NCBI RefSeq assembly: GCF_003918875.1
Contig: NW_025765969.1
Span: 1,302,001-1,366,000 of the forward strand
Length of the DNA stretch: 64,000 nt
Source: Haliotis rubra
Taxonomy: Eukaryota
Reading direction: 5' to 3'
Below the pieces are notes generated by a model. The model did no database searches. It was not told where the DNA came from and saw nothing but the letters and a program-made list of their open reading frames with translations. Shown in pieces: positions 5,685-30,790 of this stretch. Each line of letters begins with the position of its first letter. Position 1 is the stretch's first letter. The translations under genes were made by a program, and so were the position numbers.

Positions 5685-5850
5685 TGAGTGAGTGAGTATG
5701 GTTTTACGCCAATTTCTAGCAATATTCCAGCAATATCATGGTGGGGGACATCAGAAATGGGCTTCACACATTGTACCCATGTGGGGAATCGAACCCGGGT
5801 TTTCGGCGTGACGAGCGAACCCTTTAACCACTAGGCTACCCCAACGCCCC
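5685..5850 (-). mobile_element. tRNA-derived SINE family 1
   Basis: Full-length copy, (actc)n tail, TSD cagtcttggtctga. Confidence 0.9.
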
Positions 5851-16114: not shown

Positions 16115-18053
16115 CTGGAAAGGAGAACAACCTCAGCTACAGTCACATGCCTCGCCACTGTCAAATGTTCATACAAAATGATGAGCTGGTTTGGTTTTTC
16201 ACCATGTTTGAAGCAACATTCCATAACAAATACCAGCAAGTGAGTAAGTTGCTTTTTGCAATATTCAAGTAATATCACACCAGGTGACACCGAAGATGGC
16301 ATCACACATATACCCATTTGGGGAATCAAACTCGACATGACATGTGTATGCTTTAACAATACTGCTAACCCCTTCCCCAAATACCAGAAATGAGGAACAC
16401 ACTGCTATTAATATACATGTCCAATCCAGGTGGCTAACGCACATAATATGCCACTGCCATCAAATGCTAATGAATCTTTATGATATGGAACTTGAACTGC
16501 AAATTTCTTTTTGACATTCAAATAGAACAATATTTCAATATGCTTCGGGAAGATAAAAAAACAATGTCGAGTACAGCGCTCAGGTAAGAAGATCCTTTGA
16601 AACAAACCATGTATCTAAAAACTAAATAAGAGCCACTGCAGAGTCACAAGATTGACAAGGCAGTTTGCAATTCATGTCAAAGTTGACAAAACATGAATGG
16701 CTGCAGGGTTCGTTCCCTGGCTTGATGTCAGTCTTGTCAGAAGGAATGCCATCCACACAGATGTTGAGAAAGAAGACGAGAAAACAATACCACCACTCTC
16801 ACAAGAACTGAACGAACAGTTGATCTGAAATATCAATCGCTGTTGCTATTTTAAGATCCTTAAACAGTATGGTGCCAATTCTCTCCGGCCTTGCACCAAC
16901 AAATGGCAACTCTTCAAAAAGGTATGGACACAAGGTATCAAACCCACATCAACTACTTGCTCAGTTACATCAAAATTGATAGTGAAATTTATACCATCAA
17001 GAATTCTGGTTAGTCTTATTCCCACAAGGCACTTAAGCCCTGATTGAAGTTAAGATTTTGTGAAATGTGTCTACATCTGTATTCCACACAACTTGTTTCA
17101 ACTTGTCAAGACCATGCTACTACAAAACTCAACATAGCTCATGAGAACCCAAGCATCAATATTTGTGACATTAGTGTCTTTACCCTTGAGAAGCAAAGTA
17201 CAAAGTGTACCATCTCAAATAAAGTACTTCTATCTATTGTTAAATATCAGCATCAACTCTATCAACATCAATAAACCACTCTCAGGAAAACAGTATTGCT
17301 TCCTCATAAAAGCTTGATTTTTCCACATTTATTGTAAAGTTCAATATACTTCTTTGCAATATTCAACCATGTTACATCTCTGATATTTACAGAGGGTAAG
17401 AAACTTAAGTCTCTCTTTCAACTGTTACATCTTGCAGATAATCAAATAAATATAGATAGTATCAGAAAACTATCAGAATCACTGGGGGTGATGATCAAAG
17501 TAGTAATACAGTTGAATACAGCAAGATACAAAATGCTACTAAACAAGGTCACACACAATACTTCAATTTCATTAACAATTCTAAAAAACAAAATACTCCT
17601 TCAAATTTGGTCAGTCAATGAAATGGAAGTATCATATAGTGACAGATCAGATATTTGTGTGACAATGCATGCAAAAACCTATGTGTATTCAAGGTCACTG
17701 GAAAATTCTGCAAAGTAAGCCTGAATATTTTGAAATAAAAGTGACAAATTATCTGTCCTTTTCATATAGTGAGAAAGCAATCGATGTTGCTATTGGCCGA
17801 TGTACCATAGTTGACCCAATAATACAGTATACAAAGTGTAAAAAGATAGTAATAAATAATGCACATTATACAAACACCTCTATGACAAGGAAACAACCCA
17901 GAGAAGTACCAAATGCCTCCATGACCTGCTACAATAAACCTGGTGTGTGTGCTTTGCTTTGTGTCCAACTCAGGCTTGCATACATCCAAGCTCCAAAGAA
18001 TGATGTGTGAATAACGTGTAAAAGACAAACAAGAGTCATCCATTCTTGCAAAC

Positions 18054-18059
18054 TTTATT
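18054..18059 (-). terminator. Putative poly(A) signal after the last constant donor of gene A
   Basis: AATAAA followed by a GT/T-rich tract (tcttgtttgtctttt); context conserved with 29129. Confidence 0.55.
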
Positions 18060-18259
18060 TCGTAAGCAGTGCATGTGTGTTCATGTGAAAACCTTGGGTA
18101 TCTAAAACGTGGTATTATTACGTCAAGTATGGTACATCAGTAATTAAAATCTTAATTTGCAGTAATTTACCAATGTTTTGACCTGGTCTATCGTTGTTGA
18201 GCTTGAGGACGACCTACCCCAGGCCACAGTTGAGTCAGGAAGCCAGTGTGTGGACTTAC

Positions 18260-18292
18260 CTTGTGATGCCAGGAACCACGCCCCCATCATCG
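18260..18292 (-). CDS. Gene A constant mini-exon (33 nt, AMMGAWFLASQ)
   Basis: Perfect AAG|GTAAGT donor; identical to 28645-28677; symmetric phase 1-1 if the tacag acceptor is used. Confidence 0.7.
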
Positions 18293-20296
18293 CTGTACTG
18301 TGGCACTGGGTGTGTCAACATGGCAAGTGACAAGATGGATGAACTCTGACAGTCATTTCATTTTTCACTTTCCCCATATACATTAATGCCAATCCAATTT
18401 GGCCAAATCAAGACTTAGCATTGATTAATCAAACCCAAGCCCCTCCATCTTATTACTTAACTGAGTGCATGTATCTGTAGTGCTGTTTGGTGCTTGAATT
18501 ATCTTACTTTAACTTGAAAATAGCACCAGAAAAATTACTCAAGTTACTCATAATGCATGCACGTTTAAAATATCTTTAGTGAATCTGAGCCTGTGTTGGA
18601 TCATTGACAGTATTTGCATCAAGAATATACAAGCTCAATTTGAAAAACGGGGGGAAGACCAAGGGAGACAACTCTTGTGGGGTTAAGACAACAGGAAGTC
18701 AATGTTGAAGCCATTTCGGATTGAGCGTGACAAAAGCTTTTGTTATCTTTCAGAGCACTGATGACAATAAATGCTGCCATTTGCCATCTCAATTCATTAA
18801 CAATAATGGATAGATACCAACAAGATACTGAACTGCCAATCTTTAGTGATAACACCCCTTTCAAGTTTCAGAAGCAATCTTGGTGCTAGCTAGTTGCAGA
18901 TAACTATGGTATTGAACTGAAAGAACTAATTGAAACCTTTCTGGCACAAAAAACCCTATTTCTTCAGTTGCACTAAAGATTTTCAGATACTTCCAATAAT
19001 GATGTACATAAATTAATATGTTCTGGTGGCCTATTTATCACCAGCAAATGAGAAAGGTACATTTAACTTCAAATTTCAATTCAAGGGCCCTCAAAGTACA
19101 TTTCACAACTATCACAATGAATAGATCTTGCACATTTTTAAAAGCTCTGTCTGCACAACTCAGGAAAATGTCCAAAGATTCTTGACTACATACCATGATC
19201 AAGCACAGTTCAGATATTATAGAACTGCTGGTCAGCATGAAAAGATTGTTTTAAAAGCACGCCTTCACAAAGAATATGCCAAAATGAAACTGGTACAAGG
19301 CAAAAAGTCAGTATAGGCTGGATCTTTGGGTTAATTTGTATCCCAAACTGTCTTGTATAGGATGAAAAGCATAAAATTTATTTAGAACTACTGTACCTTT
19401 ACATCTCATATATTCCAATTAAATATTATTGTATTTCACCTTTTCCTTGACCTTGGGGCCATCAACTGTTTGAATAGTCCTTACAGAAAGGTCCCATATA
19501 TTAATGTATATTAATGCAGAGCTCTTGATGGATCAGAAAATTTGCCTTAGCCTTCAAGTTAGAGGCAATTTTTCCTAACAAGTTGACATCCTTGACAAAT
19601 TTCTAGGCCTGGTTATACTTATTACAAGACCTTTTGTCGACTATGTGGAATGGAAAATGCATATCACTATTCGTTCATATAGGGGCTGCAATATATTTAG
19701 TCTGCATCTCTTATTGACAGTTGTGTAAACCAAATGGACATTTCTAAGAAAGAAATAATGGCTTTATTCTGACGCCAAACTACAAAATTATATTTTGATT
19801 CAGAAAGAAATATGGCCTGATTGTTTATCAGTGACGAAATTTAGCCACTCGTACAGTCTGAACATCCAGGGACAATCCACCTTTCATGTCAACTAGTTAT
19901 TTGTTTTAACTATTTTGTTGCTAACTGGGATTTCTTTCGAGTTTCAATGAGTCTTGTCAGTTACAAAAAACACAAAATTTGTCTCACTGTACTACCAAAC
20001 TGAATTACGATGTATATATTCCTAGACTGGAATTCAATAGAAATTAGCTGCTGAATCCAATAGCTGCCCCTGAGCAGGTCTAGATAACCCCCTGATGTTA
20101 CATAAAGAACATTACGACTTTATGTTAAAATGTGCAACACTTCCATAAATCTTCAAAGGACATACTTGTGCTTTTCAGATAAAGATTTTGCGAAACTACT
20201 TGAAATTTTACAGCATTAGTTTTTCGTTTTTTTAGCAGAATACATTTCATGAAGAAACCAGCAGTTCTGTGAGGATGTATTTCAAAAGATAATTAC

Positions 20297-21188
20297 CGTC
20301 ATTGCTGTAATCTGCTTCGTTATCATCGCCGTCGTCATTTTCATCTTGGAATACTAAAAAGTCATCTGCACTTTGGTCACCATATCTTGCTTGACTAGTA
20401 CTGGGTTCGGCGTAATCTGGCACATGTGGAACGTTTTGATAGAAGGACGATGATGAAGAACCGGGTGATTGAGAATGTGATGATTGTGGATGAGAGAGTC
20501 GATCTAAAGCTGCCTTGGACGTTTGCGTATGAGGTACATCGGATGAATAATCTATTTGCATGTATGGAGTCTCTTTCTTTGGCACAACATCATCAGGATC
20601 ATGGTCTGGTTCTATTTCTATTAAATCTGGATCTTCTGGTTCTTGTTTCACATTCACTGGAGTGTCATTTTTGGGTTTTGATTGATGAGAGTGATTTGAA
20701 GGACTTGAACTTATTTGAGAATGTGGACGACGATGAACAGGTGATCTGGGTCTTGGAGACTCAGAAAAAGAAGTCCTACTGCTTTTTGCAGCCGGCTGTG
20801 GCATAGACACAGAACTTTCATGCAGTCTTTTGGCAGGATGTGACAAATATACTGTTTGCTGCACCGTTTGTATTGTGGACATATTATTAGAATTGTAATT
20901 ATCATTGTCATTTTCTTGAGGCATTAATGTGCGGTCCACATCAAACACAGAGAGTTTTAAAGTCTTACATTCACTCTTTGATATCATGCTTGCATTTGAC
21001 GATACTCCGTCCACTTTGAACGTTAGTTTGTTTGAGCGTAACACAACCTGCACATTGGCATCTTGCGTTGTGCCGTATGAGTTCACTGAGGCCGGGAATT
21101 CAACATTGGAAGTCGGCCCCTTTTGAAGCGAGGAAAATACATTGCACAATTCCACAGGAATCGTGAACTCTAGTGTTTCAATAAACAT
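20297..21188 (-). CDS. Gene A constant exon: unknown N-terminal domain + S/P/acidic linker of a putative transcription factor
   Basis: Paralogous to 25676-26543 from MFIETLEF onward; similarity ends at the phase-1 donor G|gtaatt; VKQE SUMO-type motif. Confidence 0.85.
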
Positions 21189-23046: not shown

Positions 23047-23427
23047 GAAATGTTGCACAAATCAACCTCTATCAATTAGACTTACATGGTCTTTTCAGTT
23101 CCCATAACACTTTCTCTTGTAATTTTACATGCAAATATATGATGTAACTTGGACCCAATTTTATAGTCGATTTCGGTATATCTATAATCGTCGGTCAGAT
23201 GTATCACGCAAGAGGTTGAGCCCAGTAAATCTGCAAAATGTCTTGACCACTTAGTTGTATTAAAGTGGTAAGTTATTTGACCAAATTATATCGCCCATAA
23301 GACCGGGGTTAGCCTTGTATGTGTCGTCGTATCAGATATGTATGTTTCAATGTTTTCGAAAAATAGATTCATCGTTGTTTGGAAGTATCGATGTAACATT
23401 TTGATGAACTGGAAGTTTTGTAATAGA

Positions 23428-23482
<55 letters not shown>

Positions 23483-23491
23483 GTGATGATG
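23428..23491. repeat. (GAT)n microsatellite
   Basis: About 21 GAT units. Confidence 0.95.
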
Positions 23492-23732
23492 AAAGATTAA
23501 CTCAGTCAAAGTATGTCCGTGGTGCATCAAATTTGTGGAAGTTCCCACCCGTGAGCATGATTCATTTGCTCCTCAGGCCCCTATAGCAAGAAGCTCCATT
23601 GTTCCTCAAGGTTGGAGCTGACAGAATACTACAAAAATAGCTTTGGGAAAGTTCAGCTATCAATCTGATGAAACAGTAACTGTGCAGAATATTTTGTCAC
23701 TCTTCATACACAATTTCAGACGTGCAACAATG

Positions 23733-25675: not shown

Positions 25676-26543
25676 ATGTTCATCGAAACGCTTGAGTTTA
25701 CAATTCCTGTGGAATTGTGCAGTATTTTTTCAAGCCTCCAGAAGGGCCACAGGTCAAACGTTGAGTTTCCTGCATCAGTGAACTCTTATGGCACAACGCA
25801 AGATGCCAATTTGCAGGTTGTGTTACGCTCAAACAAACTAACGTTCAAAGTGGACGGTGTGTCGTCAAATGCAAGCATGATATCAAAGAGTGAATGTAAG
25901 ACTTTAAAACTCTCGGTGTTTGATGTGGACAGAACATTAATGCCTCAAGAAAATGACAGTTACGATTCTAATAATATGTCCGCAGTGCAGCATTCAACAC
26001 CTGTGTCATTTCCATCCAAAAGACATCATGAAATCTCAGTGTCACAGCCACCTGCTAAAAATCGTAGGACTTCTTTTTCTGATTCATCAAGACCCAGATC
26101 TCCACTTCATCGTCGCTCACAACCTCAATCCAGTCCACGTCCATCTATTAACACACAATCAAAATCCAAAAATGACTCTCTGGTGAATGTGAAACAAGAA
26201 CCAGAAGATCCAGATTTAATAGAAATAGAACCAGACCATGATCCTGATGATCTTGTGCCAAAGAAGGAGACTCCATACATGCAAATAGATTATTCATCCG
26301 ATGTACCTCATACGCAAACGTCCCAAGCAGCTCTAGATCGACTCTCTCATCCACAATCATCACATTCTCAATCACCCGGTTCTTCATCATCGTCCTTCCA
26401 TCAAAACGTTCCACATGTGCCAGATTACGCCGAACCCAGTACTAGTCAAGTTCATCATGGTGACCAAAGTGCAGATGACTTTTTAGTGTTTCAAGAACAA
26501 GACGAAGATTGTGATGACAACGATGCTGATTATGGAAATGATG
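25676..26543 (+). CDS. Gene B constant exon: unknown N-terminal domain + S/P/acidic linker
   Basis: 289 codons + 1 nt, phase-1 donor G|gtaatt at the same position as in gene A. Confidence 0.85.
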
Positions 26544-28644
26544 GTAATTATATTCTTCAGTTCTTCATCCTTCAGAAGCTGCTGGCCATGCTCACAACTT
26601 TCCAAAGTTTTGTATTTGAGTAGGCAAGATTAGGAAGGCAATTCATTATTTAATCAGGTCCTTGCTTTACTGAAAAACTAACCGTAAGAAACATTCTTTG
26701 TATGGGGAAACATTGCACAGTTATTTGGGCTGCAACAAACCATATTAAAGTCAAAATAAATGTTTAAGAGAGTTGACTAATGTCCTGCCTTGGTTAAATA
26801 TTTTTCATGTTGCATATCGTTCCTGCAGTATTGAAACAATCTCAAACTCAGAAGTTTTCCCCCCAAATCTGCAAAAGGTGTGTGTAGGCTGAATCTATAT
26901 TCTGAAATATGGAAATAAACTTAAACGGTACATTGTTATGAGCATTTGATAAACATATGGCATATTTTCCTTCACTGGTGAAGAGTTGATAGCAAAAACT
27001 GAGGGTTCAAAGTGGTGATTTGTAATTGAATTGAGAGTAATTTCTTATTCAATTAATAATGGAAATTATTACAAAAGCAAGTTGCCTTCCTAATGTTTTT
27101 ATAAAACAGATTCACAAAATTTCTAAAGGGTGACAAACACAAAATATCCAACATGACTACATATGGGTAAACATTTACCAAGCTGAGAGGCAGATTTAGA
27201 AACAATGGCAAACACTTTGAAAGTATCCTTGGTCATTCAGTTTATAAGAATGTAAAAAAAAAGAGATGTCTTGGTAGTCCTCCTGCTTCCATACATTCCC
27301 AGCATAGTTTTTGCAAATCGTAAAAATTAAGTTGCAGCAACTGATATTGCTTAATGATTCAGAGACATTTACATGTTTTTTCATTTTCACTGATCAAGAT
27401 AATAAGCTTTGCTTGTGGATGGGCCCAGGTTGTTTATCAAAATGGAATGGAGCTTTGATGCACTTAATTGTCAAGGATGTAATTTAAGGTGCTCAGCTCC
27501 TTTCCTGACTGTAAATCGCCACCTAAATTTTTGTGTAGTAAGTAGTTCAATATTGTAAGTGATTGAAATTAAAAATTGAAATTAATTCACAACACATTTT
27601 GTTCATGACCTCAATATTGCTGAAAAAAAGTTCCCAAATAGTATGTTTGAGATGACATTTTGAAAAATGCTGTCGAGGAAATTATGTTGTTGTGAAACAT
27701 CCCTCCAGATCTATCTTGTGATAAAATCGGTTGCCACACCGGGGTGTATTTTTGTTAACTTTGACGGTACATGTGCTGTGATTATTCCTGATGGATTTGG
27801 TTGCCCAGACAAGTTCTTAGCATTGCCAGCAGTTTGTTTTTGTACAAAGTTTGATCATGAACATTAATTGAGAACTTACAATTCTGTAACATTTTAATAC
27901 TGATAGGTGAACTTCTGAACCATAGTCGAAGATACATTTTTATTATTTGTTAAGTTAGGTGTCCCTGTTTATACTTCTCAAAGAAAGTCTAAGGATCAGC
28001 AGATTTTTATGTTGCTATAGTTACTGTCATGCTGTAATACCATCTATGCTGTTCATGACATGGAGTAATTATTGTAATGTGAAAGTATTGTGTTCCTTAA
28101 ATGATCTGGAGTAGTATTGATGGTGCACGTAAACATGAACAGTTGAAAAACACAATTTATACTCAGATAGATTTTTGTCTTTGTTACTTAATCTTTAAGT
28201 GTTGATTGGAACATCAGAAAGCTTGCATGATAGTTAAGTTAAAGGGTGTATTTGCATTTATTGTTTTGGCGTATTTCAAGTCTTTGTGTTCTCAACAAAT
28301 AGTGTTAATGATCCAGCTCTGTCAAAAACAGTTTCTTTAAAATGTTAAAATTAAATCACGTTTTGTGTGTAAAAGTAAATGTCAGTGTTGGTGCCTTGTT
28401 TTAATTTATGGTAATTGTTAAGCACCATTTTTAGTTATGTACACACATGCACTTATTTAGCAGGTGACAAGATAGATTGATAAACCTGGTGAGGTTTTTC
28501 ATTCTGTGAAATTAAAACTGGTTTTAGCTACATAAACTGTTAGAAGAGTCAAAAAGGGATGAGTGAAATTGCTCAGGAAAGAGTTTCCTCCCTTTAATCC
28601 ATCTTGTCACTTGCCATGTTGACACACCCAGTGCCACAGTACAG

Positions 28645-28677
28645 CGATGATGGGGGCGTGGTTCCTGGCATCACAAG
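28645..28677 (+). CDS. Gene B constant mini-exon (33 nt)
   Basis: AAG|GTAAGT donor at 28678; identical to the gene A mini-exon; acceptor choice inferred from frame. Confidence 0.7.
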
Positions 28678-29128
28678 GTAAGTCCACACACTGGATTCCT
28701 GACTCAACTGTGGCCTGGGGTAGGACGTCCTCAAGCTCAACAATGATAGACCAGGTCAAAACATTGGTAAAATACTGCAAAATAAGATTTTAGCCACGTA
28801 TGTACCATATTTGACACAGTATTAAATAATACAGGGTTTTATTTCATAATTATCTGAAGCTGCCATAATCTTGTTCATGCTCTGGTTCCCGTTGTATTTT
28901 ATTTTGGTATTTTGGACTTTTCAATTTTCTCCTGTTAGCAATATAATTGGCACAAAGTTTCTAAGAAAAATTTGAGAAGTATATGGATGAAATTGTTAGC
29001 TCAAGTCTTCACTGCCAACATGTACCCAGCCCATTTTATTCAGTCTATAAAATTTGATAATAAGCCTGGATTTGTGGTGAAATAGAACCCTTCAATATTA
29101 CATATAAACACACATGCATTGCTTTATG

Positions 29129-29134
29129 AATAAA
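29129..29134 (+). terminator. Putative poly(A) signal after the last constant donor of gene B
   Basis: aacacacatgca.tgctt...AATAAAgt.tgca conserved with gene A; T-rich downstream element. Confidence 0.55.
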
Positions 29135-30506
29135 GTCTGCACGGTTGGATGAATTTGGTTCTTTCTTCCCATGTACGTTATCTTGACTCAACCGAGGTAG
29201 TTGATTGGTCACCTTGGAATGTGGAAGATGGTAAGACCGTGAAAAGTTGTGGTTCTGATTAACTTTAAACTTGAATGTATTTTAAAACTTCAGTAACAAC
29301 TTTGAAATTGGCCTGTCGATATATTCTATAACCTGTTAATTTTATAAACAAGAAATAAAGATAAAATAAAATATTTTAAAAAGCCCAAAACCGCTGCAAG
29401 ATGGATCCAATTTAATCTGAACCACAACTCCTTGGCCTGAGTACACACAGTGGCACACATTCAACATTGTTTCTTCATGTGTTATGAATTCTGTGTCAAA
29501 CATGGTACAAGTGTCATGAAGTTGAGGATGAGAAAAAGTTATCTACCAAAGGTTGAAAAATAATGTGCCTCATCAAAGTACTGATTTGCTTGTGTAGATA
29601 AACATAATTCCTCCAGCTGTTAATTGCCCAAGTGTAAATGTAACTTAGTTTTATAGATTTCAAGTCTTCACTTATTTTGCATATTTTCCCATTACCTGAA
29701 AAACATTAAGGGCTATCAAACATGCACTAGCGAACAGATAGGAATGTTACTATGTCTCAGTGGCTAATATTGAATATTGTTGACCATATTTGACCAATTA
29801 TGTGTATGTAGTCTTTGTTTGGGGTATAAATAATGTTATCACATCTTTGAACTTGGAACATTGACATGTATCATCTCCAACTAAAGTGTGTTGATTTTGT
29901 TTGGGTAATATTGATGTATAAATGATCATTTAAGGCAGTGGATCATATTGTCTGAAAATATAGTTTTATACATAAGAGGTCAGATGTGGTTTTGTACGTA
30001 AGTGTTGTTGTCTAATACTTTTGATATATGATAATTTACTAATACTCTTGTGGATGAACTTGTTTTACTGCTTGTAAGATACATACACCCTATGTGTTTG
30101 ATACACACTTCAGTGAGATATGACTATATTTAGTGTAACCACATGTTGGGATTTTGCTATGGCGGACTTGATATCAATATTTCGTGATGAATGAAGAAAA
30201 CTACGAGTCTTTGTGAAAGTGATGTTTAATCAGGATCGAGACATGTTGACGACCGAGGGAATACTTTTTCTCTGAGAAATACTGACATTTGCCTTTATCC
30301 CATTTGAAGGACCTTGATCTTCAGATGAATATTTCAAGGAGTACTAGGCCCAGTTTGGACAAGATTCGATTGCTTGGTGTTCAGATCTGCGTTGCATAGT
30401 GCGATTGCAAATGAAACAGTTTGATGTAATATGACCATTCACTTGGCCAACAATTATAGGCATGATCACGTGATATCAAGAACCAGGGACACTGAATGAT
30501 AATCAC

Positions 30507-30790
30507 CAGGGTTTTACGTGTCACTCAAATCTGCGTCCAGTACGCACAAATGTGGAGAATGGACGCAGAAACCCCCAAATACTGCATCCAAAGAGACGCA
30601 CAAAAATACCTACTGTGACTCAGGAGTAGTTACCTCTGTCTAATTTCATCCATCAGTCATGAGCACTGACCACATGACCAGGGATTCATTCATTATCTGA
30701 ACGTACACTACACCATATCAATACTTGACAGGATCCTCCTACTGCCAGCAAGGACCTATAACATTTATTGTAAGACACGGTAAAACCCTG
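30507..30790. mobile_element. MITE
   Basis: TIRs cagggttttacgtgtc / gacacggtaaaaccctg. Confidence 0.6.

What the first reader, a model, noticed from the sequence alone, without database searches (positions are those of the whole stretch)
29105..29170. Conserved poly(A) site between the last constant donor and the first variable exon
Seen: gene B has aacacacatgcattgctttatgAATAAAgtctgca..tggatga followed by a T-rich tract. Gene A (minus strand, about 18020-18082) has aacacacatgcactgcttacgaAATAAAgtttgca..tggatga followed by a GT-rich tract. The island is kept although it is about 200 nt from the donor in A and about 450 nt in B, with unalignable spacer. Inference: the constant-exon transcript may be cleaved here, leaving an unpaired 5' splice site. 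That is the expected donor pre-mRNA for trans-splicing; alternatively it gives a short isoform with no DNA-binding domain.
Basis: partly seen in the sequence, partly recalled or inferred. Interest (0 to 1): 0.8.

Follow-up and report, generated by a model that had tools for sequence, protein, structure and literature searches.

The report
Conserved poly(A)-like element in abalone intron
Two neighbouring abalone zinc-finger genes keep the same 70-90-base stretch deep in their first intron; it looks like a signal for cutting and tailing RNA and is clearly under selection, but no RNA data show that it is used, and nothing here supports trans-splicing.

Summary
The window is Haliotis rubra. Gene A (minus strand, LOC124275011) and gene B (plus strand, LOC124275018) lie head to head. 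Each has one shared 5' exon and an outward array of alternative zinc-finger last exons.

In about 4.5 kb of first intron, only two stretches align between A and B:
- the known 230-nt "block" with an unused consensus donor;
- this island (B 29098-29185, A 18090-18005).

In four Haliotis species, 90% of island columns are invariant, against 51% in the rest of the intron. Its AATAAA is the only one of 11 sense-strand hexamers in that intron kept in all four species. A U/GU-rich tract follows 20-35 nt later, as at the likely true 3' ends of the variable exons.

Corrections and limits:
- The "last constant donor" appears in none of the 164 annotated family proteins I fetched. The annotated donor lies 2.2-2.6 kb upstream.
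- Paralogues C and D keep the block but not the island.
- The most conserved core, ACATGCAYT, recurs on the sense strand without any hexamer.
- No RNA run reached the island.
- No short isoform and no cross-strand isoform is annotated.

Best reading (about 0.4): a selected intronic poly(A) signal, probably gated by the upstream U1-type site. A role in trans-splicing is untested and unlikely (0.07). The scan had already reported the block on this window.

The parts
29098..29185 (+). Island in gene B, the conserved intronic element
   Evidence: 79 of 88 columns are invariant in four Haliotis species, against 51% of other ungapped intron columns (Fisher p = 2e-14). It aligns to gene A with E 1.6e-9.
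29107..29124 (+). Most conserved core AACACACATGCAYTGCTT; contains the recurring motif ACATGCAYT
   Evidence: 17 of 18 positions are invariant in six A/B sequences. The window holds only three matches at up to 3 mismatches, against 0.28 expected.
29129..29134 (+). AATAAA hexamer, candidate poly(A) signal of B
   Evidence: Invariant in all six A/B sequences. It is the only one of 11 sense-strand AATAAA/ATTAAA hexamers in the B first intron kept in all four species.
29147..29152 (+). Conserved GGATGA, 13-18 nt after the hexamer; the predicted cleavage zone is about 29149-29153
   Evidence: GGATG is invariant in six sequences. The cleavage position is inferred only.
29154..29169 (+). U-rich downstream tract of B
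   Evidence: Read. The layout matches that after the conserved hexamers behind variable exons.
18005..18090 (-). Island in gene A
   Evidence: 95.6% identical to the H. asinina orthologue, while the flanking 1 kb is 80.6% identical.
18054..18059 (-). AATAAA hexamer of A
18020..18035 (-). GU/U-rich downstream tract of A
28594..28824 (+). Block of B, with consensus donor AG|GTAAGT (GT at 28678-28679) that is unused in annotated mRNAs; the proposed U1 site gating the island
   Evidence: 93% identical to A over 231 nt. It holds the only AGGTAAGT on the sense strand downstream of the shared exon. No block peptide occurs in 164 proteins.
18113..18343 (-). Block of A (GT at 18259-18258)
28445..28453 (+). 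Upstream sense-strand copy of ACATGCAYT, about 230 nt before the block donor, with no hexamer nearby
   Evidence: Present in all four B orthologues.
29720..29728 (+). Third sense-strand copy of ACATGCAYT, inside another conserved patch
18464..18472 (-). Upstream sense-strand copy of ACATGCAYT in gene A
26543..26544 (+). Annotated donor of the B shared exon (GATG|GTAATT, phase 1)
   Evidence: Protein junctions. An RNA contig is spliced here.
20296..20297 (-). Annotated donor of the A shared exon

Best explanation
The island is a selected, sense-strand RNA-processing element. Its 3' half is a canonical cleavage and polyadenylation signal: AAUAAA, a cleavage zone about 15-20 nt later, then a U/GU-rich downstream element. 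It sits in the first intron of genes A and B, ahead of all the alternative last exons.

Proposed mechanism (inferred, not shown): U1 snRNP bound at the unused consensus 5' splice site, 200 nt (A) or 451 nt (B) upstream, normally suppresses this signal, so that polymerase reads on into the exon array. When suppression lapses, transcripts are cut here and end early, which lowers output or yields RNA without a zinc-finger exon. The invariant upstream core ACACAUGCAYU probably binds an auxiliary protein.

Shown: conservation, strand, layout and position.
Inferred: cleavage, U1 gating and any product.
For: 1. The constraint is real. 90% of island columns are invariant in four species, against 51% in the rest of the intron. 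A and B are 76% identical here, although neutral intron between them is unalignable. A-specific and B-specific differences are fixed across species, so recent gene conversion does not explain the similarity.
2. The hexamer is invariant in all six sequences. It is the only one of 11 sense-strand hexamers in the intron kept in all species, and one of only 4 of 40 kept across the whole B array.
3. The other conserved hexamers lie behind variable exons and have the same layout of AATAAA plus a GU/U-rich tract.
4. The downstream tract keeps its U/G-rich composition between A and B rather than its exact sequence, as downstream elements typically do.
5. There is no stable RNA fold (z = 0.2, -0.2, 0.4 and 1.2), which fits linear protein-binding motifs.
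6. The sole sense-strand AGGTAAGT downstream of each shared exon lies 200-451 nt upstream. From general knowledge, that is within the range over which U1 suppresses poly(A) sites.
Against: - There is no RNA evidence at all. No RNA run held the spacer or the island, and the contigs that were laid stop inside the block.
- No annotated isoform ends here.
- Paralogues C and D keep the block and the same gene layout but have no island. C has CATATT at the aligned spot and an unrelated AATAAA about 124 nt after its donor. D has no hexamer for about 550 nt.
- The most conserved part is the upstream core, not the hexamer. Its motif ACATGCAYT recurs on the sense strand at two or three other conserved intron spots with no hexamer nearby.
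- No UGUA is conserved within 100 nt upstream in B.
- Given 76% identity, a fully conserved hexamer between A and B has a chance probability of about 0.2.
Confidence: 0.4

Rival explanations
1. The island is a binding platform for one or more RNA-binding proteins that recognise ACAUGCAYU and neighbouring words (UGCA, GGAUGA). Copies flank the block on both sides and act on use of the pseudo-exon or donor, or on exon choice. The AAUAAA is incidental.
For: - Five of the seven ACATGCAYT matches in the window lie on the sense strand in the two first introns, at about -230, +183/+434 and +1042 nt from the block donor. There are none antisense in those roughly 4 kb regions.
- The upstream copy is kept in all four B orthologues.
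- The core is the most invariant part of the island.
- Paralogue D keeps only a degenerate ACACATGC after its block, with no hexamer.
Against: - It does not explain why the hexamer, and a U/GU-rich tract at the right distance, are also kept in both genes.
- Seven matches against 2.9 expected in the window is only mildly unusual; 3 of 100 shuffles reached it.
- I could not match the motif to any factor with known binding preferences.
Confidence: 0.3
2. The signal ends the constant-exon transcript and leaves a free 5' splice site, which is then joined in trans to variable exons transcribed from promoters inside the arrays, as in Drosophila mod(mdg4).
For: - The layout parallels mod(mdg4) intron 4, which has a U1-binding motif followed by a conserved terminator in the last common intron (PMC6237743; PMC13490949).
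- A conserved poly(A)-like signal ahead of every variable exon is awkward for a purely cis model unless it is suppressed.
Against: - All variable exons lie on the strand of their own shared exon, and every A isoform that could be placed in the window is same-strand.
- The donor next to the island is not the one used in mRNAs. The annotated donor is 2.2-2.6 kb upstream.
- Paralogues C and D make the same kind of isoforms without the island.
- The fly terminator is poly(A)-independent and structured; this element is neither.
Confidence: 0.07
3. The island is a DNA-level regulatory element, such as an enhancer, an internal promoter element for the array, or a site bound by the gene's own zinc-finger products.
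For: - It is a compact, unstructured conserved non-coding block with several short invariant words, including an E-box-like CACATG.
- Other conserved patches in the same intron (29721-29808, 29950-30050) could be elements of the same kind.
Against: - All motif copies share one orientation relative to transcription.
- The poly(A)-signal layout would be a coincidence.
- No promoter or transcription-start data are available.
Confidence: 0.12
4. The 3' part of the island is the start of an intronic C/D-box snoRNA. In B the C box would be GGAUGA at 29147 and the D box CUGA at about 29255. In A the boxes would be at 18041 and 17973.
For: - Rfam snR73 matches 29144-29260 over the full model length at 29 bits, E 0.005-0.03.
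- There is a faint SNORD111 match in A.
- 13 nt upstream of the D box are invariant in the B orthologues.
Against: - The score is below the gathering threshold of 37. It falls to 18 bits in H. rufescens and vanishes in H. asinina.
- The C box is non-canonical.
- The D box reads CCGA in H. asinina B and CUUA in H. asinina A, and the would-be guide has a 7-nt deletion in H. asinina B.
- The most conserved half of the island would lie outside the snoRNA.
Confidence: 0.04
5. The island is a neutral leftover of the duplication, or the edge of an old gene-conversion tract spreading from the block.
For: The block itself is homogenised among all four paralogues at 92-94% identity, more than the coding exon.
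Against: - Conversion between A and B cannot explain slow change between species. The island is 91-96% identical between orthologues, while the flanks are 80% or less.
- A-type and B-type differences are fixed across species.
Confidence: 0.03

Closest known systems
Intronic (premature) polyadenylation sites held in check by U1 snRNP ('telescripting'), and 5'-splice-site-like elements that inhibit a nearby poly(A) site, as in papillomavirus late mRNAs. These examples come from my own knowledge, not from a paper read here.
   Same: A canonical AAUAAA plus a GU/U-rich element inside an intron, a few hundred nt downstream of a strong U1-type site that is not used for splicing.
   Different: - Neither use of the site nor U1 dependence is shown here.
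- The pair is conserved as a unit in only two of four paralogues.
- The site lies ahead of an array of dozens of alternative last exons.
Drosophila mod(mdg4) intron 4: a U1-binding 13-nt motif followed by a conserved non-canonical transcription terminator (PMC6237743, PMC11727487, PMC13490949)
   Same: - One constant 5' part and many alternative 3' exons encoding zinc-finger-type tails.
- The intron after the constant part holds a conserved U1-type site and, further on, a conserved element of about 80 nt placed before the first variable exon.
   Different: - The fly terminator works without polyadenylation and needs a specific RNA fold. The abalone island has a perfect AAUAAA and no significant fold.
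- Fly variable exons lie on both strands and have their own promoters. Here they are all in cis orientation.
- The N-terminal domain is not BTB, and the family was found only in Haliotis.
- The abalone U1-type site is 2 kb from the annotated donor, not next to it.
Immunoglobulin mu secretory/membrane switch and other composite terminal exons. This example comes from my own knowledge.
   Same: A poly(A) site downstream of a 5' splice site, so that splicing and cleavage compete.
   Different: - No annotated product uses the abalone block as an exon.
- The block's open frames are broken by frameshifting indels among paralogues.

Membership tests
Canonical metazoan cleavage/polyadenylation signal | AAUAAA (or AUUAAA) hexamer on the transcribed strand | tested here: met
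   B 29129-29134 and A 18059-18054. Invariant in six sequences from four species.
Canonical metazoan cleavage/polyadenylation signal | U- or GU-rich downstream element within about 40 nt of the hexamer | tested here: met
   B 29154-29169 and A 18035-18020. The composition is kept between A and B, and the layout matches that behind variable exons.
Canonical metazoan cleavage/polyadenylation signal | Upstream UGUA element | tested here: inconclusive
   A has UGUA about 72 nt upstream. B has none within 100 nt.
Canonical metazoan cleavage/polyadenylation signal | RNA 3' ends with untemplated poly(A) 10-30 nt downstream | not testable with these tools
   No RNA run held the island.
mod(mdg4)-type non-canonical intronic terminator | A specific, stable RNA secondary structure of about 79 nt | tested here: not met
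   Fold z-scores of 0.2, -0.2, 0.4 and 1.2. The consensus fold energy is only -6.9 kcal/mol.
mod(mdg4)-type non-canonical intronic terminator | Termination without polyadenylation; Pol II pausing | not testable with these tools
   This needs nascent-RNA, 3'-RACE or ChIP data.
mod(mdg4)/lola-type trans-spliced locus | Variable exons on the opposite strand, with independent promoters, or joined across alleles | tested here: not met
   All zinc-finger exons are on the strand of their own shared exon. The four A isoforms that could be placed in the window are same-strand. Promoters and allele joining were not testable.
C/D-box snoRNA | Boxes C (RUGAUGA) and D (CUGA), and a family score at or above the Rfam gathering threshold | tested here: not met
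   The C box is GGAUGA. The D box is mutated in both H. asinina copies. The score is 29 bits against a threshold of 37, falling to 18 bits in H. rufescens and to no hit in H. asinina.
Dscam-type docking site / selector pairing | Complementarity between the element and sequences upstream of each variable exon | tested here: not met
   Mean duplex energies against 300 nt upstream of the 29 acceptors are no better than those of 40 and 38 control intron segments. There is no reverse-complement match to the core at up to 3 mismatches.

The most novel reading that the evidence does not exclude
The island is a terminator that releases a constant-exon RNA with a free 5' splice site for trans-splicing to independently transcribed variable exons. 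That would make this Haliotis-only, non-BTB gene family a convergent molluscan counterpart of Drosophila mod(mdg4)/lola, but built on a canonical poly(A) signal instead of the fly's structured, poly(A)-independent terminator.
Probability: 0.07. Interest if true: 0.85.

Novelty: new member of a known kind. Interest (0 to 1): 0.4.

Why it matters
Genes with one constant 5' part and dozens of alternative last exons must keep the polymerase and the donor site available over tens of kilobases that are full of real 3'-end signals.

A poly(A)-type signal kept under selection in front of the whole array, paired with a perfect but unused U1-type site, would be a compact switch for how much transcription enters the array. 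It would be a natural case of U1 control over premature termination outside vertebrates and flies.

The question is cheap to settle with 3'-end sequencing, or with raw RNA reads from any abalone. If the signal proves unused, the island is still a well-delimited conserved intronic element with a recurring strand-specific word, ACAUGCAYU, whose binding factor could be sought.

Tried and rejected
- **RNA reads.** The run search found no RNA run holding the spacer or island. Four laid runs gave two RNA-like runs (X2, X3) spliced at 26543. Their only intronic contigs cover the block, unspliced, and come from A-type copies of other species. They say nothing about the island.
- **Docking/selector RNA pairing with the variable-exon acceptors.** No better than control segments.
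- **Conserved RNA fold.** None found. One 5-bp outer stem with apparent compensatory changes rests on an unreliable part of the A/B alignment.
- **12-codon micro-ORF** (ATG at 29114 to TGA at 29150). Broken by a 1-nt insertion in H. rufescens and H. cracherodii.
- **Block plus island as a coding terminal exon.** The 48-codon frame in A and B is broken by indels in C (-5), in D (-1) and in H. rufescens B (+1 and -1). One candidate acceptor AG reads AA in H. asinina. A look-up of that 48-aa product found nothing.
- **C/D snoRNA.** Weak Rfam match that is not reproducible in the orthologues.
- **Interspersed repeat.** The core-plus-hexamer pattern occurs only at orthologous positions in about 530 kb of abalone loci.
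- **Strand bias of poly(A) hexamers or 5' splice-site words along the arrays.** None seen.
- **Orthologues of gene A in H. rufescens and H. cracherodii.** Could not be fetched; products were not on record or the gene range was too long.
- **Literature.** No paper on trans-splicing or on this family in Haliotis.

Full report
**What the locus is**

The window is from Haliotis rubra, contig QXJH01000197.1. Two paralogous genes lie head to head.
- Gene A is on the minus strand. Its shared exon is at 21188-20297, and it is LOC124275011.
- Gene B is on the plus strand. Its shared exon is at 25676-26543, and it is LOC124275018.

Each has one long shared coding exon and an outward array of alternative last exons. 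Most of these encode a pair of zinc fingers. Annotated proteins join the shared exon (ending ...YGND or ...YSND) directly to a variable exon. An RNA contig is spliced exactly at 26543. The donors used in annotated mRNAs are therefore 26543|26544 in B and 20297|20296 in A.

I checked that claim partly.
- No 7-residue word from any frame of the block occurs in the 164 family proteins fetched.
- RNA-like contigs cross that donor unspliced.

**The observation**

The quoted sequences are there. The hexamers lie at 29129-29134 and 18059-18054, which is 451 nt and 200 nt after the block's GT. The local alignment of A 18090-18022 with B 29098-29167 scores 34, against 16.2 +/- 1.7 for shuffles. In a sensitive comparison of the two first introns, only the block (E 4e-88) and the island (E 1.6e-9) are significant.

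**Is it selected?**

I fetched orthologous loci from three other species:
- H. asinina (L004), which carries both A and B;
- H. rufescens (L003), B only;
- H. cracherodii (L005), B only.

The island is 95.6% identical between H. rubra and H. asinina in both genes, while the next 1 kb is about 80% identical. It is 91% identical to H. rufescens and H. cracherodii.

In a four-species alignment of the B intron, 79 of 88 island columns are invariant. Elsewhere in the intron, 51% of ungapped columns are invariant (p = 2e-14).

A-type and B-type differences are fixed across species. Recent conversion between the paralogues therefore does not explain the similarity.

A tree of the shared exon puts A and B about 0.2 changes per site apart. 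The island's 76% identity is in the same range, so it evolves about as slowly as coding sequence.

The island is not unique in B. One other 88-nt window (29721-29808) is equally conserved among species, and several lesser patches exist. None of those aligns to gene A.

**What it looks like**

The six-sequence alignment shows these invariant parts in order:
- an 18-nt core, AACACACATGCAYTGCTT;
- four variable bases;
- AATAAAG;
- TGCA;
- GGATG;
- a U/GU-rich tract that keeps its composition, rather than its sequence, between A and B.

Of 11 sense-strand AATAAA/ATTAAA hexamers in the B first intron, only this one is kept in all four species. Along the whole B array in the window, 4 of 40 are kept. 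The other three (33204, 39997, 42947), and three more kept in the two species that reach that far, lie behind variable exons. They show the same layout of hexamer plus GU/U-rich tract. This is the main positive evidence for a poly(A) signal.

The element has no significant fold.

**What weakens the poly(A) reading**

- There is no RNA evidence.
- No annotated isoform ends here, and none lacks a variable exon in this way.
- Paralogue C (L001 in H. rubra; L002 in H. cracherodii) and the more distant paralogue D (L006, H. rufescens) keep the block at 92-93% identity but have no island. The aligned spot in C reads CATATT, and D keeps only a degenerate ACACATGC.
- The most conserved part is the upstream core. 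Its word ACATGCAYT recurs on the sense strand about 230 nt before the block donor in both genes, and again about 1040-1140 nt after it in three of the four B orthologues. No hexamer is nearby, and there are no antisense copies. The island may therefore combine a recurring protein-binding word with a poly(A) signal, or the hexamer may be incidental.

**Trans-splicing**

The closest known system is mod(mdg4) intron 4. There a U1-binding motif and a conserved distal terminator sit in the last common intron, and all mRNAs are made in trans (PMC6237743, PMC13490949, PMC11727487).

The positional parallel is real. However, the fly terminator is poly(A)-independent and depends on a fold. Here all variable exons are in cis orientation, and every isoform that could be placed is same-strand. 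I found no abalone literature on this. I put trans-splicing at 0.07.

**Other readings tested and set aside**

- Docking/selector pairing.
- A 12-codon micro-ORF, broken by a 1-nt indel in two species.
- A coding terminal exon made from the block, broken by frameshifts among paralogues.
- An intronic C/D snoRNA starting at GGAUGA. The Rfam snR73 score of 29 bits is below threshold, falls to 18 bits in H. rufescens and is absent in H. asinina, and both boxes are mutated in H. asinina.
- An interspersed repeat.

**Verdict**

- The element is very probably functional on the sense strand.
- A gated intronic poly(A) signal is the best single reading, at about 0.4.
- A protein-binding platform in which the hexamer is incidental is close behind, at about 0.3.
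- One mapping of raw abalone RNA reads onto about 1 kb would settle the main question.

The window holds no N. No sequence was taken for human. Read laying was given 5,901 letters.

Noticed in passing
window 28445-28453, 29112-29120, 29720-29728 (+); 18464-18472, 18068-18076 (-): The 9-mer ACATGCAYT recurs only on the sense strand in the first introns of A and B. It flanks the block at about -230 and +183/+434 nt from its donor, and occurs again at about +1040 nt in three of the four B orthologues. There are no antisense copies in those roughly 4 kb regions. It is a candidate binding word for an unknown RNA-binding protein.
   Followed up: partly
window 29721-29808 and 29950-30050 (+): Further intronic patches of gene B are as conserved among four Haliotis species as the island (80 of 88 invariant columns at 29721). 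They do not align to gene A. Their function is unknown; they could be promoter or enhancer elements for the array.
   Followed up: no
window 28647-28793 (+) and 18144-18290 (-): A and B both carry a 48-codon open frame running through the block's unused donor and ending near the block's 3' edge. It is broken by indels in paralogues C (-5 nt) and D (-1 nt) and in H. rufescens B (+1 and -1 nt), so the block is conserved as nucleic acid, not as protein.
   Followed up: yes
window 29144-29260 (+): A full-length but sub-threshold Rfam match to the C/D snoRNA family snR73 (29 bits against a gathering score of 37). It is not reproduced in H. asinina and is weaker in H. rufescens, so it is probably chance.
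   Followed up: yes
window 33204, 39997, 42947 (+); also 53402, 56479, 61494: Only a handful of canonical poly(A) hexamers in the B array are conserved between species. Each is followed by a GU/U-rich tract, and they are probably true 3' ends of variable exons. Many variable exons have no conserved canonical hexamer, and two hexamers lie only about 45 nt before the next acceptor.
   Followed up: partly
L006:2001-5034 (H. rufescens): A fourth, more distant paralogue (D) has an 889-aa longest product and is 72% identical to B in the shared exon. Its block is nevertheless 92.6% identical to that of H. rubra B, so the block is more conserved than the coding exon across the whole family.
   Followed up: partly
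shared exon, window 25676-26545: A search of 1.84 billion representative proteins found only 10 clusters, all at least 64% identical to the query. In both word-index searches, every listed hit was from Haliotis. The family with this N-terminal part therefore appears confined to abalones.
   Followed up: partly
window 30525-30721 (+): This stretch has about 25-fold excess depth in a DNA run (206 against about 8) and many loose ends, so it is an interspersed repeat. A related family of about 150-nt repeats is scattered through both arrays, for example at 5700-5850 with more than 20 copies.
   Followed up: no
window 23338-23586: A long GAT/ATC triplet repeat lies midway between the two divergent genes, in the presumed shared promoter region. 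It reads as a run of Asp on one strand and of His on the other.
   Followed up: no
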